A stretch of 64,000 bases of DNA from Trichoplax adhaerens (lineage: Eukaryota > Animalia > Placozoa): positions 5,964,286-6,028,285 of the forward strand of contig NW_002060947.1 of assembly GCF_000150275.1 (NCBI RefSeq). The letters run 5' to 3'. How positions within the stretch are numbered: position 1 is the stretch's first letter; every line of letters begins with the position of its first letter. Below are positions 28,276 through 63,883 of this stretch, one piece after another. The translations under genes and the position numbers were made by a program. The notes under the pieces were generated by a model. That model made no database searches. It was not told the origin of the DNA and saw only the letters and a list, made by a program, of their open reading frames with translations.

Positions 28276-31200
28276 CTAAGGTATTCCGTACTCAAGGATA
28301 AAATTTGTGTTCATGTCATGATCTAATTTAGTAACATTGAGTACCTAGATGGCCCAAAGCAAAGTATAGAAATTAATTATTAGTTCTGTATATTTTGTAA
28401 AAAGAAGACAATGCTTTGCAATGAATACTTGAGACTTACTTTCTTATCGTTGTCCCAATTGAAGAGCTTGTATCTGCTATTAAGTCTACAGGAGATAATT
28501 CTCGATGCTTTGATACCATAAACTGTTATAAAATCCAATCTTGGTACTATTGAATACCCTTTGACAGTGACTGAAGCCGTTACGCCAGTCTATAGAAATT
28601 AATAAGTTAAATTTTAATCTTATCAGAATAAAAAAGCTATTTATTACCCGCAGAATATGGAATAATTTTCAATTTACTCTTTGTTAAACAAAATAAAGTA
28701 AATTCTACTCGTATAACGAGTGTTCTATCTACTTACAGATGTTGCCTCATAATTGATGATGGTATATTGTTGCTTATCAATGGTATCTTAATATGTCAAT
28801 AAATAGTAAAGCATCCATTTAAGCTCATTATCTATCATAAAGTTATTTTTGGGTAAAGTTTTCATTTTAAATTTAATAAGCTAGCTAACTAAAGGTCATA
28901 TTAAACGAAATGCGTTATCATCTACTGGTACCACAGAAAACATTAAAAATTAACCAGAAATGGCATCATTTACAAACCAGGTTATTTACAATATAATAGC
29001 TTACAATAAATTAACTATCATCCAAGGAAAAATATATCCTAATTAATTATGAATACAAAGTCCAAGAAAATTATTTTCTACTATGTCTGTTTAATTGCTA
29101 GTTTGGAGATGAAGCAGCAATGTTATTAAGAAACATCATTTATAATTATAAAATGATTAATGTCCAGCTAATTATAATTATTGCTGTACTACACTAATAA
29201 TCAACCTCATAAAAATAGCTGCAGCTAGTGCTGCTTTTCTATCTCTATTAGTGTATAATCTAACTAGACTTACCAATTGATTCTCCATCATCATAAAATG
29301 CAGTACCACTAGCTTGCTCGTTGTTATCTACAGCTATCTTTAATGAATACGGATTCTTGCGACTATTATTAAATAAATAATCGGTTATTTAAGCTTGTCT
29401 AAAGAGCGACGATACCTTTTCGTTGGGCATTTGTTAATGATAATCTAATTGAATTTGTAATCCCTTGTCTAATAACTTACGCGTAAAACGTTGTATTAGC
29501 GGGTTTTTGGTGAGGTAAAACGTAGCCACCACGAATATGCAAATTGATGTGATTTGTTGGTGCTGGTAAGTCGACAAATCTATTTACAGTATTAATTTCT
29601 TGTCCCTAAGCGTAAAAATCGTGAAACCTTAATGGAAGTTAGCATAACTACCACAAGACTATAACAAAAATTTAACATATATATGATATTACAGTGTAAT
29701 AATCGAACCAACGGCCTTGAGGGAAGTAAGCCCGAACGGAATTAGCATTCTGTAAAGCAATAAACATTTAAAATTTTTTTATCCAGTTTATATCATGATC
29801 ACTGACTATTATAATCTCAATTTCCTCGAACAGTAGTAATCTCGACTCATAAACTAGTGTGGTCTTATTTTTATAAGTCAAATAATTTTAGGATATTTAG
29901 AGTAATATCTAATCTATCAATAATAAATAAGTCATATTTCGTTGCTGATTATAAAATGTGTAAGTGAAACATTCTTACCTCCGTTAAAACTGGTGTTATT
30001 AACAAAGCAGGTCCCCATAAGAATTGTTTATCGATACTTCGAGCAACCTCGTCGGTAGGAAATTCAAACATTAGAGATCGCGTAACAGTATTGCCTTGTG
30101 TGTGTGCTTGGTAGAATAATGTGTACAAGTAAGGTAAAAGGGAATATCTTGTTAATAAAACTTTTTTAGCATTGGCTGCGTTTTCCGGACCCAATGCTGG
30201 TGGATGTTGGGCCTATGGAAATTTATGTAAAATTAGCAACTTAATTTCAATTAAGTAAGTTAATATTCATATTTCCGTCTTCAACTGAACTCAAAACAAG
30301 TATTTTACCCCAAAACCATAGCTGTTATGATTTCTTGAATAGGTATAAAATGCTCCTAACTGCATCCAACGATTACATAATGAGGCTGTTGCGTTACCAG
30401 AATAACCGCAAACATTCGCACCAACCTACAATTGTATCGATAAGATATTTACAGTTAATTGATATACAGTATTAAGTAACATTAGCATCAGAATTTCTTT
30501 AACTTTTAATATAATGTTTGACATTGCTTTTATTAGCGTTGGAAATTTAAGTCATATTCTCTGATAATATCTAATTAAGTATTCTATAAACTTACGTATG
30601 GAACACCAAACATGTTAAATTCAAGACTTCCTATAATGTAATACAATAATTTTATAGTAAGTTTTATCTATTAGCTTACCATGTATACATAGCTGTGATT
30701 ACTTGAAATAATTAAATTACCAATAATAGAATTCGACATAGATTGCCAACCAGACCAGTTATCCCCTAAGTTGTGTCCACCAAATCTTCCCGAACCAGTA
30801 AAAGTAGAACGGGAAATAATCATTCCTCGTTGTTTAACAGCTACACGAAGGGCTCTAAAGTTATTCATTTTGATGCAAATAGTAATTAGAGTAATTGACC
30901 TTCAAATTTAAGTCTAATAGTCTATTTAATGCTTAATTCCTTACTATCATAAAAAATATCAAAGGTTACTTACTTCATAGATGGCTCCATTTGGCTGTAA
31001 CCATACAAGTTATGAACATTATAGTGATCGCCCCATGTCTGCTTACCATGCATGCATAGAGTTTTATCATATATTCTATTTCCGCTTATAGCAGCTTTAA
31101 ATTATCAAGAAACATCCATTAATTAAGTCAATCAATTTATAACCTTTAACTTCACTAGCCCAGCTTAAATATGGCTCTGATAATAATAATTGAAACCACT

Positions 31201-34200
31201 ATAATGGCGGCATTTGCAAATCAACCTACCAGGCTTATATGGAGGATTATTGAAATTATTACGTGGACAACCAGAAATTGATCCAGAAACAAAGTTAGAA
31301 GGCTCATTCATGTCCTGAAGCATAATTTCAAATAACAATTTATTCTAGCAATTAGATTAGGGTATCCTGATTGAAATATTATTACATTTATCAAATTATT
31401 TTTGACGACTTTATCTACCAAGATCTATACTTATTAGTACCACGATTAGAATAGCAATTCTATTGCGATTAGAATAGCAATTCTATTGCGATTAGAATAG
31501 CAATTCTATTGCTATTAGAATATTTTAGCAATCAAATTATTACTGCAATATGTTATCATTAACATATTATATTTGTTGCATTACTACTTTTGATAATATT
31601 TTCTAATCTAATCACTCCCTCGTAATATCACATAAAAAGTTAATTTTAACGAAGTTTGAGTGCAATGCAACTTTTTACACGATGATTTTCATACTGTATC
31701 CCGATTTAACCGAATTGCTTTCGTCTATCTACTAAGATTATAGCCAAAGAATTTATAAACGATCAATGCAGTGTTGACATAATTTAAAAAAATGCTCTGA
31801 TCAATTAGTCCAAGACAGCAGTCAAAATTCTACTGTTATCTATGGAGATCCATTATTTTTAAATCTCATAACTTAATTTTTAAATACTTCGTAATGCTAC
31901 TAATTCCTTATATTTATCAAATGAATCTTAGTAAACTTCTCAGTTTTAAATTTATAATCAATGATATTTTATAGCTATATAAATATAAGGTAAGTAACTT
32001 ACTAGCCATAATCCATCAAACGAAATGTTCTTATGGAAATTTACAATCTGATCTTGCCACCAGGAGTGAGAAAGAGAATTAGTAAAATCTGGATAGACAG
32101 AAGCAGTTTGTGGCCAAACCTATGAGCAGACGGAAACATCAGAAAGTAAATCTTTTGCAGTCCCGTAACTAAAATTTATTAAATTGTGCTGTAGGTTTAG
32201 AGCAACTTATGTATTCGAATTAACTAAGCAGCAAAATGTTAAAAAATTATACATTTATCACAACTACTTTTAATCTTATTGTGAAAAACAGAAAAGATGA
32301 AGTAATTAAAAATTAAGCTGTCTAACATATAGCATACAATTTTGAAAGCAATTAACTTATTTCAATTTATGCATTCTATCTTTTCTGTTAAATATGATCT
32401 TAACTAATACTATCTATCGATAATATCATACTTATTTCTAATCTTTTGACTTATCATTAAAGATCATAAGAATTATAAATAAGCATGATATTGATTTTTC
32501 TAATTTATCAAAATGAGCTACCTGGCCACGAATTAGCATGCCATTTTCGTCTCTAATAAAGATATTACGAGTCAGACCTTCAGAATAAGGTCTATAGAAA
32601 CCAGGCCGATTACTTCGAATAGCAGGATCCTTATATAAATTTTAGCACACATATATAGATTAGAAAATAACAAGTTAAGCTGAGCAGATTGTTGGAAAAT
32701 TTCTACATGCTACTTTTATTTACCAATACAATAACGTATTTTTGTCCTTCTGCATGTAGATGGCGAACAAATTCAGGTAGTCCAGAAAAGCTTTCCTTAT
32801 TATACGTAAAATCCATTCGATCCTGCATGTAGTCGATATCCCCATACTGAACATCCTAGTTACACCATGAATTGAAATTATGGTTAGCATGCTATATATA
32901 GAAATTTATACTACTTTAGTTAGGCAAGCTGATATTTATCGCATTCAACGTAAGTTTGGAGTAAATTTGTTATTTTAAAATTTTATGATTTTCAATATCA
33001 CAGACCTGTGGGATTCCGGCGTCTTTCATCTCTTTAACAACTTCTTTGACCCGATCTAAGCTGTTATAACCCCAGCGAGATAACTGAAAACCTAGGGCCC
33101 AATAAGGTGGAAAATATGGCAAGCCTATAGTCTTTATAGCATTCAATATCAGTCAGTACAAAATCACCAAAACCTAAAGAGAATGTACTGAGCAAAAACT
33201 GCATTTTAAATTTAGCCGTAACATAATTTTAACTATTAAATGTATGAATAAATGAAAAATAGGCATCTATGTGTACATCCAATTAATATCATCTAAGTAA
33301 TAATAATAATCTTCATATTTTTAATATGCAGGTTAATTAACACTAGCGACTGCAGTATTTCAGACCTTAATATATTGATTAATGACATCTTGTGGACTTG
33401 GGCCAAGAAATACTATGAAATCGAGAATGCCTCCAATAGTTCTCCAAGTAAGACCAGGCGATGGAGTTAATACAGCCTCTATGAAAGATATCACAGAAAT
33501 TGATGAATCAGATAATATACTGATCACAATTATTGGTAAATTTTGTTGTATAAGACTCATACTAAATATCTTCAAGATTCACTTATCGAAATCGGAGCTA
33601 ATTTATTTAAGGTATTACTAATAAATATCCAGAACTGCAGTAAAAAATCATGGAATGGCTCTCTTACCCAAAGCATTGCTATTAATTAACAAAACGGCAT
33701 GAGCATTGCCCGCATTATCTTCAATATTTAAGTACATAGGATGGACTCCATACAAATTTTGATTGGTCTTAAGGAAGATGTAATTATAAAGTTAAAATAG
33801 ACTTGATCTAATTGAAGACTAATAGGCGTAAATTTCATAACTCGATTCTCACTCTAGATCTTGCAAAAGCTTAAACTGAGCAAAAACAAACTTACATCAG
33901 GCATGTTATCTGAGGCAAACATTCCCCAGCGGTGCCAATTCCAGTCTTGATGGCGATAATTTTGACGCTCATGTTCTCCTAACCCATAAAGCCATGTTGA
34001 TGATAGTTTACTTGAAATTTGTAAAAACTGATCTTCGTAGATAAATCCACCAACACTTGTGTCCATACTATAAGCAAAATGATGTCATCAGTCACTGTAT
34101 TCAATAGTCGTTGATCAATATTGACCATCATGATTAGTAATTGGTCCTGAATTTATACTTTGAAATAATACTATGACGAAAGTACATACAGCTCGGATTA

Positions 34201-37200
34201 AATGAAACCATTGCATTAATTAGTTTAAAAATATAGACATACATGACTTGACCCGTCGATTTTCTGGTAATTTTAATCGAAAATGGATTGGTATTAACTT
34301 GAACGTGATATAAAGGATTTCTATTGCCTTGATCACTTTCTTTCATATCAGGAAATTGTTGAATTGGAACCTGATATCTTGCACTATTTCTATCTGTAAT
34401 CTAAAGGCAAACATAATTATTCAAGATTCATATCCTGGTTTTCAAACAAAACGAAATAGCTATACTATAGGGCAGCATTTTAAGGACTAGATTGCGTCTT
34501 GAAAATATTTATTTAGCTAACGCAATATTGGCTTCTATTGACGCTATACTACCGTAGAATTAATCCAAATCAAACTTGAAGTTTTTAAATAGCCTGCTAA
34601 TAGCTATTCTAATTTGATCATTTGCTATGAATCCAGTTCCTTCCCAGGTGAAAAATGAGGAGTACACTTAAAACTTTAAATCTAATTCATGCTATACCGT
34701 ACTTAAATTTCAGCTATTCAAAGAGATATGCATAATTTATATGGGCGATTATTACAAATTTATCCTTAATAGTTATTGAATAATTTTTCCCAAATTTACA
34801 TTTACTGGTAGAGTAGAATATTCCGTCAGAATAATTTCTTTTACTTTTTACTAGCAGTCTATCTTAAAAGTTAACCTCTTTGCCTAATTCATACACTGGG
34901 TACAATCCTATCAGATAGCTTAGTTTTGCTTTTGAAGGTCATTTTATATCACATAAGGTAATTTCATCTGTCTTACAGTTGATTTTAAAACTTGCAGCAT
35001 CGGTTACGCGTTGCTGAAATTTATGGCTTAAAATTTTATTAAATTGTTTAGTACTCAAATTAATATAGGAGACCCAATTATGGAAAGGAGAGTGAGATAT
35101 TTTCTGACTATAAACTGAGGCCAAAATATCACAGTAATTAAGCTCCCTAAACCTTTTAACGCACAAAGAAATTCGTTTATAGGCGGCTAGTGCGCATAAA
35201 GTGCTAAAGCCTATTAAATATCAAGCTTGTACTAACTTTACCGTAGTATTAATGATTAGCCTAGCGAAACAAACCATTTAAACTGTGACACTTTCTAATC
35301 TCTACTTGCCAGCCAACATTGCGTTTAACAAACTACCAGTTGTAACAGAATTAAATTTAGCAGTATTAATTGAGGATATAGAAGGAATTTAATGTTATAT
35401 CTTAACATTAATCAGACTAAACTATAAATAAAAAGAATCTATTTAAGCCCATTCCTAGCTATTAAGCAATTTTTAGGCTACTAACTTATCCCATTTCTAC
35501 CCTAAATATCAGTACTTTCAAGGGCATATACTATACCTGCAATCCTTTAACCGGCTATAAAATCTAATCTATACAGTCTGCAACAATGACTAATCAATTC
35601 TTCACCTTTATTGATTACTAATCAGCATTTATTTTGTTCCAATAATTTTATTGACATATGCCCGATAGCCATATGATGCGACAGACAGTTTAATTCATTG
35701 CCCATAGATATGAGTAAGTTGATAAATAAATAAAGGATAAACATTAGAAAAAATCTTCCAATAAACAGTCTCTGAGTAATAAATACGATGACTTGTCCTT
35801 GTGCCGATATAAGAGCAAAATTTTAAAATTGATCGGAAAGGATCAGAAATGGTCTAGTAGAGTTTAAAGTATTCTTTAGTAATAAAGAATGCCATTTTCA
35901 CTTTATAGGGATAAATGGAGAAAAATTTAAAGATTTGAATGTTTGATAAGAGAATAATTATCCTTAGCGTATATTCTACCAAATGAACTAACTGTTCCTT
36001 CAAAGAAATGATGATTTGATATGGCGTTAAATGAATTTCCAAATTTCCCTCCACTCTCAAAAATCAATTTGTTATTAGCAAATTAACTTAGTCTCTTGGG
36101 TTTAATCGAGTTCTCATGAAATTTACTGGCAAGACAAAATCATAACGTAAGACGATTGTCACTTTGTCTAGCAGTTTTAAAGTTTGTCTGGTTGTCAACT
36201 GGACTGAATATTCTGAAATTAATTTTAATCGAGATTTGAAGCAAAAATATAATCAAACATTTCAGGCATTATGCATCAACACTTGTGTAACAATAACGTA
36301 GATTTTTAATTATCATTAAACTTCTTGATAACAATGCAATTATTACCTACGAAACTAGGGAACCTAAAATAATATTTCAAGGTTTAGCTGTACTAGTACT
36401 TAACATTTTGGAAATTTAAAGCAAAACTAGAGTTGATAATTGTTAAAATCCCAAAGCAACCCAGGAAATAGACAAGTTTAGAATCCTGCTTTACTGCAGG
36501 CTGGACTGAATATTACTGTAAGAAATTTAAGAAATTAAGAGTTTAAGTAGAACAGAAATTGGTAGCTACAAAGTCCACAAGGCTATCTCTTTGATTTAAT
36601 ACAAAAAGTAAATTCCTAGCAGTATTGGACTGCTTAGAAATAAATGCAAAATCCTTTAAACCTAATCGAGTTATGAATATAGCTCTAGGTATATCAAGTA
36701 TCCTAATAGACGAAAGGTATTTCATTGCAATGAGGGGCAAGTAACGTCGCCCGTGAGAGCCTGTGACCTTCGAATGTTCGATCAATAATATTACTAACGT
36801 TTGGTTTAACAACCACAATTTCTTAAGATTTTAAGACGCAATTTATTTAGGTATGAATTACGCATGGTAGAGCACTCTTGGTTCTTAAGTAGAATCATAA
36901 AGAAGAATAACCATCCGAGAAATAACTTGATGATTCCAACTCATCATTATAATTTAAGAAGTTCAATCATCATTTATAAGCTCTCCACAAATCATTCGAA
37001 GCCATCTAGCCTTACAAATACGCATATTCTGCCCTACTATATTAATTATTTCTGATGTTATTAAAGCATAAGCTATGTGCACGTATCTTACCTTAATTCG
37101 CAACCGAGAGGCTGTTTGATGCTGAATATCTACTCGCAGAGATATGGCAGGTGAATGATAGAGAGCTGGCTGATCTAAACGACGATTAACAATCACTCGC

Positions 37201-37787
37201 TGACCAAAAGAGACATTTTGAACTTGTTGGCCATAATAGGTAGTATAATTAGGTGGGTAATAACATGAAGGAGCATTTTTGGGCTCAGAAATGGGATTCC
37301 AACAGCAACCACGAGCTATGCATCCACTTTGCGATCGTTTAACAACATCAGGAAAGCAATCAAATCGTTGATAACCAGCGATTTGATTGCATGTAGATGG
37401 CTGTGTTGGATCGCCAACCGTTGGTTCTCTAGTCGTTGATATTATTATTGGTGGACGACTGGTTGGACTATTAGTACTAACTACTGGAATACCACTAGTT
37501 GTACGTGTAGTTGTTGCTGATATGGTCGAAGCAAATGTTGAATTTTCTGTACGTAAAGGATTATCAGTACTTTGGCCCAGTCCTGATTGCTCACCTGGGC
37601 TTTCATTTCGATAGGCCATTATGGTGATAGGAATAACGGCGATAATTAAAGCCAGTCCTGTGATAATAAGACCGATAAATAACTTCCGATGAGTTGTATT
37701 TCTTTTGACTTCGACAACAGCTTCTTGATCTTTTGAAGGCGATGTTTGCTCGTTTTTGAACGATTTAATGTCTTCTTCACTTGCCAT
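28276..37787 (-). CDS. GH31 alpha-glucosidase-like paralog C (type II membrane, altered active-site residues), 21 coding exons, ~995 aa
   Basis: Exons: 37787-37092, 34400-34243, 34067-33896, 33767-33668, 33478-33366, 33131-33006, 32855-32724, 32629-32522, 32119-32003, 31314-31230, 31094-30974, 30854-30721, 30630-30596, 30425-30309, 30212-29979, 29749-29693, 29605-29481, 29362-29274, 28786-28737, 28589-28440, 28344-28276. All GT-AG, no stops found. Motifs: TM, stalk, six-Cys trefoil, DIDYM, GQVWP, WLDMNE, HNLGDN, GANVCGY, RNHN; ends ...ILEYGIP*. Confidence 0.94.
31444..31522. repeat. 23-bp perfect tandem repeat (GATTAGAATAGCAATTCTATTGC) x3 plus a partial copy, in intron 9 of gene C
   Basis: Directly visible; the unit contains internal inverted repeats (AATAG/CTATT and GCAAT/ATTGC). 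Confidence 0.95.
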
Positions 37788-40700: not shown

Positions 40701-43365
40701 TTATAGTATATGCACCGAGCTATCATAGCTAGTCTATATATGCAGTTTGGGTTTGAGTAATGGGACAACTCTAATACAATTATGTAGTTTATAAGAATAA
40801 TATAAATGTCCATGGAGTCAAGATTTACTTTAGATCAGTAGTTGTTATGAACTAAATATTATAGACAAATAAAATGAAAGCATTGAACTTCGAAGTATCT
40901 TCTTGGTCACCAATTCATTAATAGCTTTCAAATAATTATCCAATTAAAATACTAGTTTTGAGTCGGAGCTCACTCGCTATGCTCACAGTCAATTAATTTT
41001 AAAGTTCAAATAATAATAAATCGCTTAGTTGCACTTAGTAGAATAATATTATATTTTAGTAATCATGTTCATCAGTATATTGGATTTGAATATTAATTTA
41101 CTTGATATGGACGTTAAATTTCATACATAATCAATTTTTCACTTATAGGGCACTATGTTTTAAACGTTCTTAATGCAGTGGTATTATTATAGAATGTTCT
41201 ATTAACTTTTACATACTATAAACTACTTAGAAGCAAGTTGCAAATCGGCAAGACTTTACAACAATAATAAATTGCAGAGCAACCAAATCAAATTTTTCAC
41301 TAAAAGAACGGCATGTTATTACACTAATTATGATTTAGAGCGACCCTATATCGCTCTTATGTAATTTATTTTGGCTTAAAAATTTTAAATGATAATACCA
41401 TATATTCATGATCAGGGAACGCATCTGATCTTAAATCTACTATGGAATGCAAGCCCACTACAGTTGGCGTTATCTGATAGTCTTATCCATTTATTCATTA
41501 TGTTAATTTCAATTAGGATATACTATTAGTAAATTTAAGGCTACTATTTTTGGCTAGTTTACATTCCCCATGTTCTATTTTTATAATCTATAAAAAAATA
41601 GCAGCAAAATTGACCTAAAGGCCGTAGTCCGATACTTTATTAGGATTAAAGGTAAGGATTAGATATTCTTTTGACTACCATATTGATATTTATTCCACGT
41701 TTAACCTATATTAAATGGATGATGTTAAGGGTATAATAATATAGCCTGTATAATGACGAATACAAAGTGTACAAAATTTTCATGCACTCTATAATATTTA
41801 ACTGGCGAAAGAACAGACCAAAGGAAAAGTAAGAGAAATAAAAGCTGATTTTTCTTTTCCTTTTTCGGTTTTCAGTGTTCTTTTACTTGGTGCTGTTTGA
41901 GGCTTTTCAATTTATGATCTGCTAGATCTATTTTTAAAGATTTCTACCTACTAAATCTTTTACAGTCTCATATTTAAAAGCCACCAGCAATTTACGAACT
42001 TTTATGCTGCTTGCCAGGTAGTGCTACTACAGTAAACTGCTATTCATCCAACCCGGAATCATGCCTGTTGATTGGTCTTGAAAAAAGCTGATCACAGTGT
42101 TAATTACAATAATGCTAATTCCACAGCTATTGAAATCGAGACATCTATTCCTTATCATTATCAGTATCCTATGTTGTCCATGTCGTTATCATTATGAATT
42201 TTACTAGACCTCAAATATATTCATCAATTAGTTATGTTACCCGTACATGAATATGAGTGCGTATAATCTGCAAGAACGTTTTAAAAATAATTCAGCCTCA
42301 ATTATATTATTGCAATTGAAAGACCATTAGCTATTCTAATACTTAGGTATTTATTTAAACGAAGGCAAGTCTATCTAAAATGGTTATTTAACAATAATAA
42401 TCCAAATCCAACTTTAGTTATAAAACGATTGGGTAGGGATTCAATACTTGGTGCAAAATTTTCTCGTGAGATGCTTTCAGACAAACTCTACTTGTTAGAC
42501 AACTTCAGATAAATCCATTTATTGTAAATTACTTATCGTTAGCAATTTTAACATTTAGGTATTTATTTAAACAATTGCAATTCTATCTGAAGTGACAATA
42601 AAAAGCATTTGAATGCTATTGAAAAAGTGATAACTTTAAGAAGGCTAGAATAGGTTAAACTAAATTTTAATCAGGATTGAATATACGACAGCATACATGA
42701 TGTTAACAAGAATTAATTAAAACGAGATTAAAAAATTTTCAGTATATAAAATAAAGATACGCTGAAATAGATAAGTTTCTGTTAAATTGTTATAGCTATG
42801 GATTAAAAATCTATGAAATCATAGAATATATAGGATGCATAGAGCTAAATAGCAATTTATAGGAATTCTTTATAGGTCACAGTAAAACCTCCACCATTCA
42901 TGTTGTAGTCTAATGAGGCACCGTTTATACCATATATATCCTAGACCTAACCAATAAAAGTAAAATAGAACTCATGCTTGTTAATATCCCAACTTTTACA
43001 AGAAAACTATCCATGTCTATTAGCTACAATGAAACCCATCGAATGGAGTAAGCAAATGAATCCTGAGCTAACGCATTAATATAATCATTAGCGAAATTAC
43101 CCTAGTATTAGAATTAAATACATGATTCTTAAATTCGCCACCCACGGTTACCGATACAATATAGGGAACTGTTATACCGTAAACCAAAATATTGCTTACA
43201 GTTGGTTCAATGGCATAATCATTCTTCACCATGTTGACAGTTAAAGTATCCTATAAAAATAGAAGAAGAATCCAGATTAAGAGTTAATACCTTCATATTG
43301 GCAATATTGATTATGTCAATATCGTCTCATCGTAGGCATGTCTAGATAAACGATTATAATTCTAA

Positions 43366-43461
43366 TCCATTTTAAATTTATATCTATACGTATAAAATCG
43401 CAAATCTTCTCCATTTTAAATTTATATCTATACGTATAGAATCGCAAATCTTCTCCATTTT
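43366..43461. repeat. ~44-bp direct tandem duplication in intron 19 of gene D
   Basis: TCCATTTTAAATTTATATCTATACGTATA(A/G)AATCGCAAATCTTC occurs twice, followed by TCCATTTT. Confidence 0.9.
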
Positions 43462-45264
43462 CTATCTAAATAGCATCGCAGAGCATAACATTGACAGGCT
43501 TTCGGTTGCTTTGTTCATGTGATTGTCTACAATACTTTCAACCTTGAGCATTAGCCTATTTGCAACAGTATATCATAAAATACCTTAGTAGCCTTCATAG
43601 TCATGTAGGTATATTGATTATTCTTAATAGTATCTAGAAAAATAAGAGCTTAGTAAATAAACAACAAATAATATCACCAGATGATCTTCAAGACAATGCT
43701 AATGCCGACATGGGCAAAGATTTATTTTAATAAGCAGAAATAAAATGCATGATTAATACCGAGACTTAGAATTTGTAAGAGTGTCATTGATACTAGAGAT
43801 CTAGACTATACTTTCTACTTTAAAGTAATTAAAAAATTCTTGATATTGTATTTTGGAAAGAATAAAAGCTTGAAATCGCACGATATATAGCTACAAAATA
43901 AACTGGTTATCCGATCATCAATACTTTTAAAACACTTGCTAGACGTTGCAGCTAGTACGATGCCGAAATAGAAGTACTAATAACGTCTTCTATCAAGGTA
44001 TAAATTTACTTGGCATCGACGATTGATATAAAGCAATAGTTTATGGGGAAAATGCCAAAATCAGTATTTTATAAAGTAATGTGTTCTTAATGCTATTGGA
44101 ATATTAATAAAAGATTTATTTAGTTACAGATTATCAATTTTAAAGTTATATCGATGATCACCAAATATTTATCATTGATTATATTAATTATAACGGCAGT
44201 AATTCATTATTCTTAAGATTACCTATGCTCTCCCCATCATCCCAAAAGAAGGACCCTTCTGCATAGTTGTTAGCACTGATAGCAATAATAATAGTAAATT
44301 TATTTTTTCGTCTGAAATGTAGAATAATATTACGTTAGAATAGTGTCAAATCGCATTTTAATCTTAATTTTTACTCATAGATACCATAAAGTACCTCAGA
44401 AGATTATTTTACGAGCATACGAACATGATAATCATATACGAGTTAGGACCAAGATTACGATTAAACCATAAGGAATCATACATAATAAGATAATCTAGCT
44501 GTTAATTTTCTTTTAATATATTGCTTCGTGCAAAATATGTTTCCGTTCATTTGAACGGGTAACTGATTAGCAAGTCTATTATTATTAATATAAAGGTAAA
44601 CTGATAAAATTAGGTCAAAAATTAATTTCATTCATACGTAGTCTTAGCGACATGAGGTATCGTAGGCAGATACATTTCCTATCTACGTTACAACTAAGAT
44701 GATAAAATATGTTTAAAGTAACAGCGATGTTTGCAAATACAGAGGGATGAAATATAGCCACCAAACCAAAATAATCATGTAACTGATTCTATGCCACTAT
44801 TGAATGCTATCTTCAAAGTTTAATAGAGCATTAAAAATAAATTTAGGATAGTTTACTTGGCTAGGACTACGATGACAACTAAATGACCTAGTAGAAGACC
44901 TTGATGATATGAACTTACGAGTAAACTGTAGTATTAGCCGGTTCTTGTACGACCATGATGCTTCCCCCACGCATATGAAGAGGAATATAATCTGCAGGAG
45001 CATTCAACGAAACATTACCTTTAGTTTTTAATTCTACACCCTATTGAAATCAGATTAATGCATGGAAAGTAGATATGACTAGCTCAAAGCTTAACATCTA
45101 TTTATCATGTAAGTAGCATAAGTTCTCTATTTTTTTATACTATCCCTCTTTAATATCATAAGGCAACCGTAGTAATGATATACTTACGGTATAATAGTCG
45201 AACCAACGCCCACTTGGAAAATAACCATAGACACTATTTGCATTCTATTTAATTGGAGAATGAT

Positions 45265-45640
45265 GTTTAATTGATTCGTCAATTAATATCAACATTTAGC
45301 TTCTGACATGTAAGAATCGTCAAAGAGTGGAATTATGATGGAATAATAAGAGGAGGATGATATTTAATTGATTCATCAATTAATATCAAACATTTAGTTC
45401 TCAACATTTAAGACTGATGAAAGAGTAAAACCATGGTAGAATATTTGATAGCAGAATGCTATCATTAAATTGCTTCATCAATTAATATTCAACATTTAGT
45501 TCTTAACGTTTAGATTGGATAAAAGTGGGACTATGGTTGAGTATTTAATATGCGAATAATGTTATTCAATTGATTCATCAATTAATATCTAACATTTAGG
45601 TTCTTAAGATTTACGATTGGTCAAAGAGTGAAGTTATGAA
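45265..45640. repeat. Degenerate ~100-bp minisatellite, 4 copies, intron 15 of gene D
   Basis: AATTG.TTC.TCAATTAATAT..AACATTTAG at ~45269, 45366, 45468 and 45568. Confidence 0.85.
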
Positions 45641-46056
45641 TAAAAATTGAAATTGAAATATAGGCAATTTTATCTTCAAATTCGAATTCATTAGACAATA
45701 GTTCATTATTTATAGCAAGAAAACAAGTTTGTAACTTACATCTTCCAAAATCGGAGTAATCAACAGTGCAGATCCCCACATAAATTGTTTATAAATGGAA
45801 CACGTGATTAAATCTGTTGGAAACTCCATCATTAACGAGCGCATAACGGTCTTTCCTTCTGTAGCTGCTTCATAAAATAAGGTATACAGATAAGGTAGCA
45901 ATCTATAACGTATGAGCAGAACTTTCCTAGCATTTACTGCATTTTGAGTATCAAATGCTGTTGAATGTTGAGGCTACAAAGGAAAATAAAGTAATTTTAT
46001 ACCATTAGAATTTTTCTTCTTCTATCCTAAAATATCAAACATTGATCTTTGTCTTA

Positions 46057-46257
<201 letters not shown>

Positions 46258-47169
46258 TTATGATTTACAATAGCATTGCAAATTACTGTACTACGCTTAA
46301 ATCTGAAAATTTACAAATTTCAAACATACAAATGGTATGCCAAATAGGTTAAACTCCAAGGAACCTGTTCAAAAGCGAACAAATGGTAGGAATTTATAAA
46401 GCCAATTATGATTAAAATTAGCTGAAAAAATTGTATCGATTTTATTCTATAATCAGGCTGTAGCCATTTGTGAATATTGATATCTCCTTTGAAGCAATGT
46501 AGAGTATATCCTAATAAAATGTTAACCGATAATAGAATAAGCCATGGATGGCCATTCAGATAGATTGTCGCCAAGCCAATGGCCACCATATTTACCACTA
46601 CCAGCAAAAGTCGAGCGACTAATCATGATACTTCGCTTTCCCGTCGCTGTATTGCAACCCCTAAGAAATTATTCGCAAGTTCTGCTCATAAGTAGGTATC
46701 GTAAGATTAAAACTATTTATATCAGCACTTGAATATACCATGAATGCTAATTAGTTTGATTTAAAGATATAATATAGACGCAAATACTACAAAATGCCAT
46801 AAAATTGCAAAGTTATCGACGGCAGAAGAGATTCAATCTCAATTATAATAATACATTGAAAAATTGACTTAACACATATAATTAAATAGGATATACTATG
46901 ATAATACCAGCTATGAAAATAAAATATAAAATTAAACTCTATTCAACTCTCTTTACTGTATTTGCAGCTTACTGTAAAGATGGCTCTATTTCACTATATC
47001 CATATAAACTGTGGGTGTTATAATGACTTCCCCAAGCCTGCTTGCCATCCATACAGATAGTTTGATTAAACAAAGTCTTTCCAATGATTGCCTCTACAAG
47101 CAGTTTTTAATTACTCAATTGCGTAATTAAATCAATACCTGTTTATATTTATATCTATAGAACTTAAAA

Positions 47170-47735
47170 GCAATATCTGAGGATAAAATAAATTAAAGTC
47201 TAAAAATTTAAACCACGTTGCCGTACAATTGGATCGATATCTGCTAAACGCGTATTAATATATTACATGTACAGGTAATATCTGACGATAAAGTATTTAT
47301 AATTACTAAAGTCTAAAAATTTAAATAAGACTGTTTTACAATTAGATCAATACCGGCTGTATTAAATTAATATGTAAAATCTACAGGCAATATCTGACGA
47401 TAAAATAATAACAATTACTAAAGTTTAAAAGTTTAGATTGTAAAGTCGTACAATTAGATCAATACCTACCATATTAATATATAGAATGTACTGGCAATAT
47501 CTGACCATAAAATAATTGCAATAACTAAAGTCTAAAAATTTAAACTATATTGCCGCATAATTTAATCCATACCTCCTATATTAATACGTTAAATGTGCAG
47601 GCAATATCTGACCATAAAATAATTATTACAGTCTAAAAATTTAAGCCATACTACCGTGCAGTTATATCAATGCCTGCTATGTTGATGTACAGGCATTATC
47701 CGATGATGAAATAAATCAATGTCTAAAAATTAAAA
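47170..47735. repeat. Degenerate ~105-120-bp minisatellite, about 6 copies, intron 10 of gene D
   Basis: GGCAATATCTGAC.ATAAAATAA...AAAGTCTAAAAATTTAAA recurs at ~47170, 47275, 47386, 47493, 47600 and 47691. Confidence 0.9.
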
Positions 47736-49360
47736 CTCCTAATCATTGCCACTAAACTATGACTCAAATTTTAAGATTTTACACAAATTAATTTCTTCAT
47801 TACTTGGTTTATATGGAGGATAGTTGTATTGATTGTTAATACAACCGACAATCAATCCAGGGACAAAGTTTGCCGGTTCATTCATGTCCTAACATCATGG
47901 GATAACAGTTATTTAGATTATTTGTCTCATGAAATTTTGTCTCTGATCACTACATCGAAAGCCAAAGGGCCTTACACCCGCTCAAACGATCCAATACAGC
48001 AGTTAATAGAATAGTTTAATTTTAAGATTTAATGTAGCTACATTAAATACCAATCCTTATCCTATAAAGAGAAATTTTCATCTTATCTGCTCAAAAATTG
48101 CCATCTAATACTAGAAATGATTTATACATTATTTTTTAAGACAATGGAACTTCTCAAACGCAGCAATCGATAGCAACTTACGAGCCATAGACCATCAAAT
48201 GGAATGGTTCTACGGAAATCAACAATCATATTTCTCCACCAAGTTTTTGTCGAGTCACTAGTAAAATCCGGAAACACGCTAGTTCCACGAGGCCATACCT
48301 ACAAGCGAAAATAAGCGGCATATATGTGTCTTTAGTACATATAGAATTGACTAATTTATCGTAGCTTATAGGGTGTCCTTTTTAGAAGCAGGCTTCTTAA
48401 TATCTTACTGGATATTTTGCTAAAAACTGGATTCCAGATTCGAATAATAATCATAATATTACCTTGCCAACAATCATTCTATCATCGCTATGACGAATAA
48501 AGATATTTCTTTGCATTCCTTCATCGTAGGGAGGATATGTGCCATTAGTTTCATTATTGCCGATCTGTGCATCCTAGTTGATGCAATAGAACAAGTGTCG
48601 AGCAATCGTAATTAATAGATGTTGTAAATAATTTAGCTGCTAGAAATACGAGTATAGAATATACTCGAGATTAATGCCATCATTACAAGTTTAATAATAT
48701 ATTTTTGGCCACGATTATGAAGATCGTCGATAAATTCGGGTAAACCACCGTAATTGACTGAATCATAGGTAAAACTTAGATGGTACTTGGTAAAGTCAAG
48801 ATCATTAAATTGGACGTCCTAAAAATAACTGAAATTCTATTTTCAGCCATCATCATTAAACTATCAGATCAAAATCATGCTGACAAACCTATTGGCGTTA
48901 AATACTTAATAGCATCAATAATATATATGCCGCTTATTTACCATTGGAATATCAGCTGTTCTCATTTCTTCCAGAACTTGCTGAACATGATCCAAATTTT
49001 GGTATCCCCAACGACTTAGTTGGAAACCCAAGGATTAATAAGGTGGCAAATAAGGTAATCCAATAGCCTTCAATATCAAGCCAATGGGGTTATTAGTAAA
49101 TTATTGGTACATAAGTATTGTAGGAAGCAGACTGGCGAGTTTCAAACAGCTGATTATGATTATAGGCCTAGCCTAGCTAGTCAAAATTTAATTAAACGAT
49201 TCATTAACTATGTTATAAGATTTTTAGTTTGGTCTAATACAATAATTAACTCAGCAGAAATTTAAAGCCAAGATATTTACATTTAATGTGATATTACAAT
49301 ATATTTGTCGTAGTTGCAGTTAGTAAAGCTCTAAGCCACTATGTTTACGTACAAGATCTA

Positions 49361-49513
<153 letters not shown>

Positions 49514-51467
49514 TCAATCGAGTTTGATGGTATAAATATCATTGTATCCAATTATATTGTTATAATCTTGTAGCTTTTAGACATACCCATAGCATTGCTA
49601 TTGGCTAAGAGAACAACGTTAGAGTTACCAGCATTATCTTCGATGTTTAAGTACATAGGATGTGTACTATACAAATTTTTATCAGGCTGATTAAAACAAG
49701 GATAATTTCATATCAGTATAGACTTTAAAAGTTAAAGAAATTCTAAGATGGCACAAAATCCTAATGCTTCAGCCAATATACTATACGCTATATACATAAG
49801 TAACTATATACTATTACTCCTAAAGTTTCAAATAAGTCTACTTAAACCGAGTTAAGGATAAAACAATTATTTCAAAAATTTGTTTAGCCGTTGTAAAAGT
49901 TGATCGTATACGAAATCGCAACGGCAACAAATTATTGACTATTCAAGGCTATAATACTTTGTTGTAATCCACGAAAAATATTAATACTATCAATTATAGC
50001 GGATCATGGAAAGCAGCAAGAACTTGTCTTATAACCGTAATTTAGCAGTGTGAGCTTAATTCTACTGTTCATAACTATGAAACATCAATGCAGTAATTAC
50101 AAGTGTATAATATCTAAAGCAATTTATTATCACAACTAGCTTTACCGGCCACTACCCGATTTTTATTTATTTTTTATAATATATTCTTAATATAGTAGTA
50201 ATCATTGCCAAAAAGTCAATAACACATTTTCTAGTCAGAAAGCAATAGCTGTAGCTTGATTCTAAATCTCTAAACTATTATCTGTCGGTCTAATATTAAG
50301 TAGATAACTAAATATTTCAGCTTTAAACTATAACAGCTGCCGAGATGAGTGTAAACTTTCTGCTACTAGTTACTAAACACTTTATAAAAGCGAAGAGATA
50401 GAAGTAAAAGTCAATCACTCTGATTTATAGCTATCAAGTCTATTGCAATATCTACTGTAGAGAGTAAACTTAATAAACTATTCAATATACCCCAAGAAAT
50501 TCGTCTCTAGCAAACATTCCCCAACGTTTCCAGTCCCAGTTTTTATGGACGAAGGACCGATGTTCATGTTCACCTAAGCCATAGAAATACTTGGATGGCA
50601 ATTTGGAAGAAATCTCCAAAAATTGATCTTCATAGATGAAGCCAGATACGCTGGAATCAAAACTATATCCAAATAAGAGATGTAAACATTAACAGCAATT
50701 AATTTTAAACGTTCTAGCTAACTCAATTTCTTGAAATGAAATTCCATTTCTAGTGTATCACAGAACTTACATGATAGTATTTGTCGATCGCCTTTTAACA
50801 ACTATAGCAAAAGGATCCGTTTTTACTTCAACATCGTATAGACGATTTGCAGCTGTTTGATCATTTGCATTCATAGTAGGAAATTTGATTGGCACTTCAT
50901 AGCGGGCTGTAGCGTTGTCCGTAAACTATAAATACGTAATGGACGTGTCAGTATTTCAGGTTAAACATGACAATAAATATTTCTCTAACTTAGCTCCACT
51001 CATTCTAGGTATCGATACTGTAATTAAACATTCAAACAGAATAAACGCTAATTCATGACATGGTGTTTAAAATATTACCCAATTTATAACTAGTAACCTC
51101 AGAATATTATTACTAATAACCGTAATAGCTGAAACGAATTTGGAATCCCTTAGCTATGTCGTAATCTCAGTACTACCGTAAATAGTGACAAGATACGCAA
51201 GTTATACTAATCTATTCGATCATATTAGATTGTTGTAGTTATAATGGTATAATTGTTAATTCGAGATTACTTTGTATAATTATTGGCTCAGAAAACTTGA
51301 CCTAGCATCATAATTACTTTAGCAATGTTGAATCGATGCAGGCACTAAAGAAAATTCTTGGATAATAACGATCTTAACTTAATAAACGATAAATGCTTAG
51401 GAATAACGAATAATTCGTTATCAATGACGAATTTTTAGCTAATTGATATCAATTTCCTTTAGCAGAT

Positions 51468-52073
51468 TGTTACGGAGCAAAGCACCGTACATGTTAACTT
51501 AATTAAGTAGATTTCATTACGTAGCTATACGCGGTAAACAGTGATTATAAATATTAATCGTGCATAGTTTTGTTAGACTACCTAGATGTACTGTAAGCGT
51601 GTTCTGAAATCTATTAGTATAATCTTTATAGATACTAATATTGGCATGGCCTTAGCACCCGCCGCGAAGTGCGAGTAGCTTACTGAGCATCGCTCGTTTA
51701 ATTGGCTATTTATTAGTTATTGCCAATTAAAGTTTTTTACTAATTGTATCTATAGTAAACTATATAGTTTATTGAGGGTTGTTTTCTTATAAGAACCCTG
51801 TAAATGTTATGTTGCTTAATTACTATGTGTGCACCTCAAGTTTGGCGGTAGAGTATAAAAGGAGGATCAAATGCTCAGCTCCTCAGTTCGTTCGTGATTA
51901 GAAAGCATTTCGGCTACTCTACCAATAAAACTATACTAAATTCTTAGAACAGTCTTACCCCTGTGTGACTGTAAGTAAAACAGGACTACCACACAGTAGA
52001 CCTAAGTGTAGTGGAGATAGGAATAAGTAATCTATTATTTTAGGGTAGTAGTTCGCAAAACAAGTTTATTACA
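51468..52073 (+). mobile_element. Solo LTR (606 bp) of an LTR retrotransposon, inserted antisense in intron 1 of gene D
   Basis: Starts TGTTAC and ends ATTACA (TGT...ACA termini). Flanked by the exact 5-bp direct repeat CAGAT (51463-51467 and 52074-52078). Internal TATAAAAGG (51854-51862) is followed by AATAAA (51924-51929). Locally more GC/CpG-rich than flanks, and similarity to B's intron 1 resumes just after it. Confidence 0.75.

Positions 52074-57696: not shown

Positions 57697-63883
<6,187 letters not shown>

What the first reader, a model, noticed from the sequence alone, without database searches (positions are those of the whole stretch)
30402..33913. Paralog C keeps both catalytic Asp residues but has a remodelled sugar-binding pocket (HWLGD->HNLGD, GADICGF->GANVCGY, RD->SD)
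Seen: C is intact and keeps the nucleophile (WL|DMNE) and acid/base (GDN) Asp. The Trp before the acid/base is Asn (AAC at 30772-30770, three changes from TGG, so not a single-base error). The Asp of GADICG is Asn (30416-30414), the following Phe is Tyr (30404-30402), and the Arg of the N-terminal 'RD' loop is Ser (33913-33911). B, D and E all keep W and D. Established: these positions correspond to human GAA W613, D645, F649 and R281 (NtMGAM W539, D571, F575, R202), which line the -1/+1 subsites, and D645N is a known Pompe-disease substitution. Inference: several co-located changes in an otherwise conserved gene suggest a neofunctionalised GH31 with a non-alpha-glucoside substrate, a transglycosidase/lyase-type activity, or a low-activity carbohydrate-binding surface protein.
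Basis: partly seen in the sequence, partly recalled or inferred. Interest (0 to 1): 0.82.

Follow-up and report, generated by a model that had tools for sequence, protein, structure and literature searches.

The report
Placozoan alpha-glucosidase paralog lacking pocket tryptophan
One of seven tandem membrane-anchored GH31 alpha-glucosidase genes of Trichoplax adhaerens is intact and under strong purifying selection, keeps its catalytic residues but has lost an almost invariant sugar-pocket tryptophan, a loss shared with an ortholog from another placozoan-like genome, so it is probably a specificity-shifted enzyme and not a decaying copy.

Summary
Paralog C (window 28276-37787, minus strand) is a complete 21-exon, 990-codon gene. 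It encodes a type II membrane protein with anchor, Ser/Thr/Pro stalk, trefoil and GH31 domains. It keeps the nucleophile and acid/base Asp and the Arg600, His674 and Asp404 equivalents. At the stated codons it carries R281S, W613N, D645N and F649Y (GAA numbering).

The four changes are not one signature:
- **W613:** Trp in 483 of 485 surveyed animal GH31 units.
- **Ortholog:** a 1.6-kb metagenome scaffold carries a C ortholog (78% identity, same exon sizes, clade support 100/100, dN/dS about 0.04-0.10). It reads HTLGDN and GADICGY, so Trp loss and Phe-to-Tyr are ancestral to the C lineage. D645N and I646V arose later, on the T. adhaerens side.
- **F649Y:** a recurrent natural variant.
- **D645N:** found only on that Tyr background, including the N-terminal unit of mammalian MGAM2.

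Simple decay is rejected. The likeliest reading is a still-catalytic alpha-glycosidase with a more polar, probably wider, -1 pocket wall. The substrate is unknown. It is not a YihQ-type sulfoquinovosidase.

I found no expression data, and no 3D model of C was made. This is a new variant of a known kind, of moderate interest.

The parts
28276..37787 (-). Whole gene C: ATG at 37787, 21 exons, stop at 28278-28276. CDS is 2973 nt and encodes 990 aa.
   Evidence: Spliced alignment, all introns GT-AG, one terminal stop only
37092..37787 (-). Exon 1: cytoplasmic tail, membrane anchor, Ser/Thr/Pro stalk, trefoil domain and start of the N-terminal sheet domain
   Evidence: 232 codons without a stop; Pfam Trefoil PF00088 at residues 133-178, E 1.5e-10; hydropathy and stalk composition
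37614..37682 (-). Predicted type II membrane anchor, residues 36-58
   Evidence: Best 19-residue Kyte-Doolittle window, mean 2.85, preceded by HRK
37254..37391 (-). Trefoil (P-type) domain
   Evidence: PF00088, 41.2 bits against a cut-off of 21
34243..34400 (-). Exon 2
33896..34067 (-). Exon 3: N-terminal loop that supplies the +1 subsite Asp (MFASDNMPD)
   Evidence: Aligns to NtMGAM 153-206 and to MGAM 9KZ6
33911..33913 (-). Ser codon TCA at the GAA R281 / NtMGAM R202 position. The next codon is the conserved Asp (D282/D203).
33668..33767 (-). Exon 4
33366..33478 (-). Exon 5
33006..33131 (-). Exon 6 (PPYWALGF; W376 equivalent kept)
32724..32855 (-). Exon 7 ([10 protein letters not shown]; D404 equivalent kept)
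   Evidence: PF01055 positions 39-81
32522..32629 (-). Exon 8 (VIVLDPAI; I441 equivalent is Val)
32003..32119 (-). Exon 9 (VWP; W481 equivalent kept). Ends ...DGLWL.
31230..31314 (-). Exon 10, starts DMNE. The nucleophile Asp codon is at 31314-31312.
30974..31094 (-). Exon 11
30721..30854 (-). Exon 12: ISRSTF (R600 equivalent) and HNLGDN (acid/base Asp at 30763-30761)
   Evidence: PF01055 positions 208-244; solved-structure alignment
30770..30772 (-). Asn codon AAC at the GAA W613 / NtMGAM W539 position
30596..30630 (-). Exon 13 (35 nt)
30309..30425 (-). Exon 14: [11 protein letters not shown]...SRNHNS (H674 equivalent kept)
   Evidence: PF01055 positions 258-292; solved-structure alignment
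30402..30416 (-). Codons Asn (AAT, D645 position), Val (GTT, I646), Cys, Gly, Tyr (TAT, F649 position)
29979..30212 (-). Exon 15
   Evidence: PF01055 end and PF21365 start
29693..29749 (-). Exon 16
29481..29605 (-). Exon 17. Its 125-nt length is shared by C, the L011 ortholog and paralogs U2 and U3; the clade-mates U7, U4 and U6 have 137, 128 and 122 nt.
29274..29362 (-). Exon 18 (FYDDGES; the Trp-to-Tyr change is shared with the ortholog)
28733..28786 (-). Exon 19
28440..28570 (-). Exon 20
28276..28344 (-). Exon 21 with the stop codon (...FILEYGIP*)

Best explanation
Gene C encodes a single-unit, type II membrane-anchored GH31 ectoenzyme of the MGAM/SI/GAA kind. It is one of seven tandem paralogs that Trichoplax adhaerens probably uses for surface digestion of prey glycans.

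Early in the C lineage, the Trp that packs against the -1 sugar just before the acid/base Asp was replaced by a small polar residue. It is Asn in T. adhaerens and Thr in the ortholog. The neighbouring Phe became Tyr.

The double-displacement machinery was kept: nucleophile Asp, acid/base Asp, and the Arg600, His674 and Asp404 equivalents. The protein therefore most likely still hydrolyses alpha-glycosides. One wall of its -1 pocket is probably wider and more polar, which would shift substrate preference or kinetics away from plain maltose-type substrates.

D645N and I646V are later second-shell changes on the T. adhaerens side, probably tolerated because Tyr was already in place. When R281S arose is unknown.

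Shown here: gene structure, residues, conservation, selection and the order of events. Inferred: retained catalysis, the pocket geometry and the digestive role.
For: - **Gene structure:** intact 990-codon CDS with 20 GT-AG introns, an anchor, a stalk and a trefoil domain.
- **Family:** the exons match PF01055 and PF21365.
- **Ligand residues:** 11 of 17 catalytic or ligand-site residues are unchanged. The six changes are R281S, I441V, W613N, D645N, I646V and F649Y.
- **Trp column:** W in 483 of 485 units, never N.
- **Ortholog L011:** 225/287 identical residues and identical sizes for the six complete shared exons. The clade has 100/100 support. It reads HTLGDN and GADICGY and keeps the R600, D616 and H674 equivalents.
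- **Selection:** dN 0.12-0.14 against dS 1.4-2.8, so omega is 0.04-0.10. Codon positions 1, 2 and 3 are 84%, 88.5% and 49% identical.
- **Age:** dS against all paralogs is saturated, so C has stayed open for a long time.
- **Contrast:** relatives that really lost function also lost catalytic residues (P0415, P0376) or gained a stop (paralog D).
- **Literature:** W613 and F649 contact the -1 ligand in GAA.
- **Tyr position:** the Tyr aligns with YihQ Y508, which helps recognise the C6 sulfonate of sulfoquinovose.
Against: - The new residues are not fixed between orthologs (N versus T, N versus D, V versus I). This fits local relaxation as well as a new specificity.
- C has 6 changes at 122 near-invariant columns. 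That is above the 95th percentile of 4 and equals pseudogene D.
- C has 6 unique changes at sites conserved everywhere else, against 2 in the ortholog. Its terminal branch is 0.18 against 0.10.
- D645N in human GAA causes severe loss of activity.
- No annotated protein or transcript-derived protein for C turned up in T. adhaerens or T. sp. H2.
- There is no 3D model and no assay.
Confidence: 0.5

Rival explanations
1. C is a low-activity or non-catalytic glycan-binding surface protein. Selection keeps the fold and the binding groups for binding, sensing or partnering with the active paralogs, not for turnover.
For: - It has lost an almost invariant pocket Trp.
- D645N abolishes most GAA activity.
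- The pocket-wall residues drift between orthologs.
- It shows an excess of changes at near-invariant columns.
Against: - Both catalytic Asp and the R600, H674 and D404 equivalents are kept in C. The ortholog scaffold covers three of them (D616, R600, H674) and keeps all three, despite saturated synonymous divergence.
- Known degenerate relatives lose these residues.
- D645N with Tyr is the conserved natural state of a mammalian MGAM2 unit that keeps HWLGDN.
Confidence: 0.2
2. C is still an ordinary maltase-type alpha-glucosidase. The substitutions are tolerated near-neutral variants, buffered by the Tyr, with no change of substrate.
For: - Most ligand-contact residues are unchanged.
- F649Y occurs in 17 other units.
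- D645N occurs naturally on a Tyr background.
- The Trp-position residue is not fixed within the C lineage.
Against: - The Trp column is W in 483 of 485 units, and W is also kept in the distant YihQ.
- Such constraint makes a neutral loss unlikely.
- The C+L011 stem branch is long, 0.22, with several shared aromatic changes.
Confidence: 0.2
3. The T. adhaerens copy has recently lost constraint and is on its way to becoming a pseudogene like its neighbour D.
For: - D645N and five other unique changes fall at otherwise conserved sites, against two in the ortholog.
- The relative-rate test is significant with outgroups U2 and U3.
- No annotated or transcript-derived protein was found.
- A decaying paralog sits next door.
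Against: - There is no stop, frameshift or broken splice site in 2973 nt and 20 introns.
- Five of the six unique changes are conservative.
- The relative-rate test is not significant with the closest outgroups U7 and U4.
- Annotation of this array is patchy for clearly intact paralogs too, since E and U2 are also missing.
Confidence: 0.08

Closest known systems
Brush-border maltase-glucoamylase and sucrase-isomaltase, and lysosomal GAA (animal GH31 alpha-glucosidases with a trefoil domain)
   Same: - Same domain order, and for MGAM/SI the same type II anchor plus O-glycosylated-type stalk.
- 45-55% identity.
- Same nucleophile, acid/base, Arg, His and Asp ligand residues.
   Different: - C has one GH31 unit per gene, not two.
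- The pocket Trp (W613/W539) is Asn.
- D645/D571 is Asn, F649/F575 is Tyr and R281/R202 is Ser.
N-terminal unit of mammalian MGAM2 (probable maltase-glucoamylase 2, FLJ16351-like)
   Same: Carries GANICGY, the same D645N plus F649Y pair, as its conserved natural state (P0306, P0307, P0002, P0284, P0293).
   Different: - It keeps the Trp (HWLGDN).
- It is a multi-unit protein.
- Its function is also uncharacterised, as far as the sources' names show.
Toxocara canis two-unit GH31 protein (P0382), first unit
   Same: Trp replaced by a small polar residue (HSTGDN) together with Tyr (GADICGY). The acid/base Asp is kept.
   Different: - It is an independent lineage, a nematode.
- Its gene model lacks the RNHN region.
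- No orthologs were examined.
Sulfoquinovosidase YihQ (GH31)
   Same: The Tyr of C aligns with YihQ Y508, one of the sulfonate-recognition residues.
   Different: - YihQ keeps the Trp and the Asp.
- C has Asp, not Gln, at the Q288 position.
- At the W304 position C has the Phe of ordinary alpha-glucosidases. An Arg can be aligned with R301, but paralog U1 has one there too, so it is not specific.
- C lies in the MGAM-like clade.

Membership tests
Glycoside hydrolase family 31 | Match to the GH31 TIM-barrel model PF01055 and the C-terminal model PF21365 above the curated cut-off | tested here: met
   Exons 7, 12 and 14 score 35-44 bits against a cut-off of 23.5. Exon 15 scores 42.7 bits on PF21365. 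Genome scan.
Glycoside hydrolase family 31 | Nucleophile Asp in WxDMNE | tested here: met
   WL|DMNE, Asp at 31314-31312
Glycoside hydrolase family 31 | Acid/base Asp in the HWxGD motif | tested here: met
   Asp at 30763-30761 aligns to NtMGAM D542
Glycoside hydrolase family 31 | Trp preceding the acid/base (HWxGD) | tested here: not met
   Asn in C, Thr in ortholog L011. W in 483 of 485 animal units and in YihQ.
Glycoside hydrolase family 31 | Asp of the GADxxGF motif | tested here: not met
   Asn in C. Asp is kept in the ortholog. Asn is also natural in MGAM2 units.
Brush-border MGAM/SI type | N-terminal type II anchor, Ser/Thr-rich stalk and trefoil domain ahead of the GH31 module | tested here: met
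   Hydropathy peak at residues 36-54, stalk 53% S/T/P, PF00088
Brush-border MGAM/SI type | Two tandem GH31 units in one polypeptide | tested here: not met
   Each of the seven array members has its own ATG, its own anchor and its own stop
Brush-border MGAM/SI type | Maltase, glucoamylase or isomaltase activity | not testable with these tools
   Needs an enzyme assay
Sulfoquinovosidase (YihQ type) | Tyr at the Y508 position | tested here: met
   Alignment of E. coli YihQ to the family HMM: HSDIGGY aligns to GANVCGY
Sulfoquinovosidase (YihQ type) | Q288 (or the Glu plus Lys pair) and the R301/W304 sulfonate pair | tested here: not met
   C has the GDIDYM...DFTY pattern of its alpha-glucosidase paralogs. 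The profile alignment is of low confidence in this stretch.
Sulfoquinovosidase (YihQ type) | Placement in the YihQ/SmoI clade | tested here: not met
   C nests inside a placozoan-specific MGAM-like clade. YihQ itself was not in the tree; it aligns at 22% identity.
Processed or decaying pseudogene | Stops, frameshifts, broken splice sites, or dN/dS near 1 | tested here: not met
   None in 2973 nt and 20 introns. Omega is 0.04-0.10 against the ortholog.

The most novel reading that the evidence does not exclude
The C lineage defines a new specificity class within animal GH31. Its marks are a small polar residue in place of the HWxGD Trp and a Tyr in place of the GADxxGF Phe. On this reading it evolved in placozoans to cleave a modified or non-glucose alpha-glycoside from algal or microbial prey, for example a C6-substituted glucoside. 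The Tyr sits where YihQ reads the C6 sulfonate. The Tyr-first, then Trp-loss or Asp-to-Asn path recurs in nematode, sea-urchin and mammalian MGAM2 units, and would then mark a general alternative pocket design in the family.
Probability: 0.3. Interest if true: 0.65.

Novelty: new variant of a known kind. Interest (0 to 1): 0.45.

Why it matters
GH31 active sites are among the most conserved in carbohydrate enzymology. The Trp lost here is treated as a fixed part of the -1 subsite in the human enzymes that matter for Pompe disease and diabetes drugs.

This lineage has lived without that Trp while under strong purifying selection. It shows the residue can be replaced, and it offers natural scaffolds for asking what the Trp does. 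The natural GANxCGY state shows that the Pompe substitution D645N is tolerated when the neighbouring Phe is Tyr, a testable epistasis.

For placozoan biology, seven anchored GH31 genes, one of them with a divergent pocket, point to a broader extracellular glycan-digestion repertoire than a single maltase.

Tried and rejected
- **Joined model:** the spliced protein of C was built only inside scripts and was sent to no tool. It was searched exon by exon. There is therefore no structure prediction, no fold search and no full-length database search of C.
- **Word searches:** the three searches used the C1370 open frame, P0004 and P0204 as queries. They found T. adhaerens and T. sp. H2 proteins for U1, U3, U4 and D, but none for C, E or U2.
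- **T. sp. H2 contig:** it was reached through P0204, but the 10-kb flank ends about 1.7 kb short of C. The only closer handle is a spliced 207-aa model, which I could not pass by reference.
- **Own-genome look-up:** the look-up of TRIADDRAFT_56702 returned nothing, because records of the window's own genome are left out.
- **Metagenome scans:** the first found no relative. The second found only 45-61% identical GH31 genes of other eukaryotes. The state of the R281 position in the ortholog therefore stays unknown.
- **dS estimates:** NG86 and YN00 fail from saturation, so ML and LWL85 were used.
- **Sulfoquinovosidase:** considered and rejected.
- **Lyase or transglycosidase:** nothing in the sequence speaks for or against. 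Not pursued.
- **Scan notes:** only neighbouring observations turned up.


Full report
**Source and setting**

The window is Trichoplax adhaerens scaffold C1410, 5964286-6028285. The assembly has 105.6 Mb in 1414 contigs. A locus elsewhere in the genome is 100% identical to TRIADDRAFT_34135. It is not human DNA.

A genome scan with the GH31 barrel model PF01055, followed by tblastn with P0004, shows seven GH31 units in tandem on the minus strand of C1410. Four lie in the window and three just upstream of it.

I wrote a protein-to-genome spliced aligner and ran it on all seven units. Each unit is a separate gene. Its first exon opens with ATG, a short cytoplasmic tail, a hydrophobic anchor, a Thr/Ser/Pro-rich stalk and a trefoil domain. 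Each unit ends in its own stop.

**Observation**

- C reads MFASDNMPD, with Ser at 33913-33911.
- The nucleophile motif WL|DMNE is split by intron 9.
- C reads HNLGDN, with Asn AAC at 30772-30770, and GANVCGY at 30422-30402.
- All six paralogs have TGG, GAT, ATH (ATT, ATC or ATA) and TTY or CTT at the four barrel codons.

Exon-by-exon alignment to solved structures confirms the numbering. Ser is NtMGAM R202. Asn is W539, three residues before D542. GANVCGY is NtMGAM 568-575 and GAA 642-649.

**Gene integrity**

C has 21 exons, 20 GT-AG introns, a 2973-nt CDS and 990 codons, with only the terminal stop.
- Exon 1 (232 codons) carries a trefoil domain.
- The anchor scores 2.85 on a 19-residue Kyte-Doolittle window, and the stalk is 53% S/T/P.
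- Exons 7, 12, 14 and 15 match PF01055 or PF21365 above the cut-off.

By contrast, neighbour D (U6) has TAA at 49037-49035 in place of the W376-equivalent Trp.

**How unusual the four residues are**

I aligned about 730 GH31 domain hits from 295 animal proteins fetched in the word searches. Of these, about 470-485 cover each site.

| Position (GAA) | Residues seen |
|---|---|
| W613 | W 483, G 2, never N |
| D645 | D 463, N 3, A 3, E 2 |
| R281 | R 381, K 79, S 2, H 1 |
| F649 | F 446, Y 17 |

All other catalytic and ligand positions are unchanged in C: D282, W376, D404, W481, W516, D518, M519, R600, H612, D616 and H674. I441 is Val.

At 122 near-invariant columns C has 6 changes, against a median of 0 and a 95th percentile of 4. 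Three of these are W-to-N, D-to-N and I-to-V in the two barrel motifs. One (G-to-A) is shared across the placozoan array.

**Literature check**

- In GAA, W613 and F649 make hydrophobic contacts with the -1 ligand. D282 and R600 bind the +1 sugar.
- R281 is described as H-bonding a main-chain carbonyl of the catalytic domain.
- D645N is described as loss of a strictly conserved, buried residue that helps forge the active-site architecture.
- D645N causes severe loss of GAA activity.

Two of the four residues are therefore pocket lining and two are second shell.

**Age and selection**

- Synonymous divergence between C and every paralog is saturated. Only B-D has dS near 0.7.
- On a protein tree the placozoan genes form their own clade. 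C groups with E, B and D at 99% support. Its terminal branch is 0.49, against 0.27 for E.

**The ortholog**

It lies on a 1588-bp ENA metagenome scaffold, L011.

Spliced alignment shows eight exons; the six complete ones are the same sizes as C exons 12-17 (134, 35, 117, 234, 57 and 125 nt), all with GT-AG introns.
- Identity is 225/287 (78%) to C, against 67% to E and 64% to B.
- C and L011 form a clade with 100/100 support. The stem branch is 0.22.
- Codon positions 1, 2 and 3 are 84%, 88.5% and 49% identical.
- ML gives dN 0.119, dS 2.81 and omega 0.04. LWL85 gives omega 0.10.
- Fourfold sites are 41% identical, against 34% expected from base composition.

The C lineage is therefore under strong purifying selection.

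**Order of events**

L011 has Thr (ACT) at the Trp position, GADICGY, FYDDGES, and the R600, D616 and H674 equivalents.
- Shared C-lineage changes at sites constant in the other paralogs include W to N/T, F649Y and W to Y in FWDDGES.
- D645N (GAT to AAT) and I646V (ATH to GTT) are single transitions unique to T. adhaerens C.
- C has 6 unique changes at otherwise constant sites, five of them conservative. L011 has 2.
- Tajima relative-rate tests are not significant with outgroups E or B, and significant with U2 or U3.

So Trp loss and Tyr gain are ancestral. D645N came later, on a Tyr background. The state of R281 in the ortholog is unknown, because the scaffold ends before that exon.

**Recurrence elsewhere**

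- All six other GxNxxG[FY] units in the fetched proteins carry Tyr. Five are the N-terminal unit of mammalian MGAM2-type proteins, for example "probable maltase-glucoamylase 2" of Talpa and the FLJ16351-like protein of Cricetulus. P0002 and P0306 show HWLGDN; P0307 reads HWLGNN (acid/base lost); P0284 and P0293 are fragments that do not cover that motif. The sixth is a sea-urchin fragment that has also lost the acid/base.
- Trp loss also occurs with Tyr in unit 1 of a Toxocara canis protein (HSTGDN, GADICGY) and in the sea-urchin fragment.
- Trp loss occurs with Phe in a Ridgeia protein that has also lost R600 and H674.
- Tyr is present in only about 4% of units. This suggests that Tyr is permissive for both changes, but the number of independent events is small.

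**Sulfoquinovosidase test**

I aligned E. coli YihQ, taken from the K-12 record, to the family model.
- YihQ keeps the Trp (MWAGDQ) and the Asp (HSDIGGY).
- Its Y508 falls in the F649 column, so C's Tyr sits where YihQ helps read the C6 sulfonate.
- At the Q288/R301/W304 region, C looks like its alpha-glucosidase paralogs. Alignment confidence is low there.
- C lies in the MGAM-like clade.

C is not a YihQ-type enzyme. The homology does suggest that the altered wall faces the C6 side of the -1 sugar. That is an inference.

**Reading**

- Decay is rejected.
- Retention of all catalytic and hydrogen-bonding residues across saturated synonymous divergence favours a working retaining alpha-glycosidase. 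Truly degenerate relatives lose these residues.
- The -1 pocket wall is remodelled, probably wider and more polar.
A low-activity binding protein or a still-ordinary maltase therefore cannot be excluded.

**Limits**

- The joined spliced protein was not handed to any tool. There is no 3D model and no full-length search of C.
- No expression data were found.
- No annotated C protein turned up in T. adhaerens or T. sp. H2. Intact paralogs E and U2 are missing too, so this says little.
- The H2 contig fetched stops about 1.7 kb short of C.

Noticed in passing
window 49035-49037 (minus strand), gene D at about 43068-55143: Paralog D has an in-frame TAA where all the others have the W376-equivalent Trp codon. 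It also has I441K and GADICGL. It is nevertheless annotated as TRIADDRAFT_56702 (P0239, 633 aa, 99% identical to my model). B-D omega is 0.19.
   Followed up: partly
G000:C1410:5934001-6038000 (window plus L001-L005): Seven tandem single-unit GH31 genes, each with its own anchor, stalk and trefoil exon, form a placozoan-specific clade. Intron positions are largely shared. Only U1, U3, U4 and D were found as annotated proteins.
   Followed up: partly
L006:2872-6432 (minus), scaffold C1370: A 1187-codon intron-free open frame holds the C-terminal half of one GH31 unit, a linker and most of a second unit. TRIADDRAFT_34135 (872 aa) starts in the middle of it. The real gene is probably a two-unit MGAM/SI-like protein whose annotation is truncated.
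   Followed up: no
P0306, P0307, P0002, P0284, P0293: The N-terminal unit of mammalian MGAM2-type proteins carries GANICGY, the Pompe-type D645N together with F649Y, as its normal sequence. All D-to-N cases seen are on a Tyr background, which suggests epistasis.
   Followed up: partly
P0382 residues about 500-720 (Toxocara canis): The first unit reads HSTGDN and GADICGY. This is an independent loss of the pocket Trp on a Tyr background, with the acid/base kept.
   Followed up: no
P0415 (sea-urchin FLJ16351-like fragment) and P0376 (ENA metagenome): These GH31-like fragments have lost the acid/base Asp (GHALGKN, GATLGNN) as well as the Trp. They look like pseudoenzymes or pseudogenes.
   Followed up: no
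window about 31445-31530, intron 9 of C: A short tandem repeat of a roughly 23-base unit (aatagaattgctattctaatcgc), visible in the raw sequence.
   Followed up: no
window 61820-61821, gene E: The best spliced model of E uses a GC donor after exon 10 (61906-61822).
   Followed up: no
L012:3868-4595 (T. sp. H2 contig NOWV01000065.1): In T. sp. H2 the anchor, stalk and trefoil first exon of the B ortholog is annotated as a separate 207-aa gene. The rest is annotated as a 774-aa 'lysosomal alpha-glucosidase', so the gene model is split.
   Followed up: no
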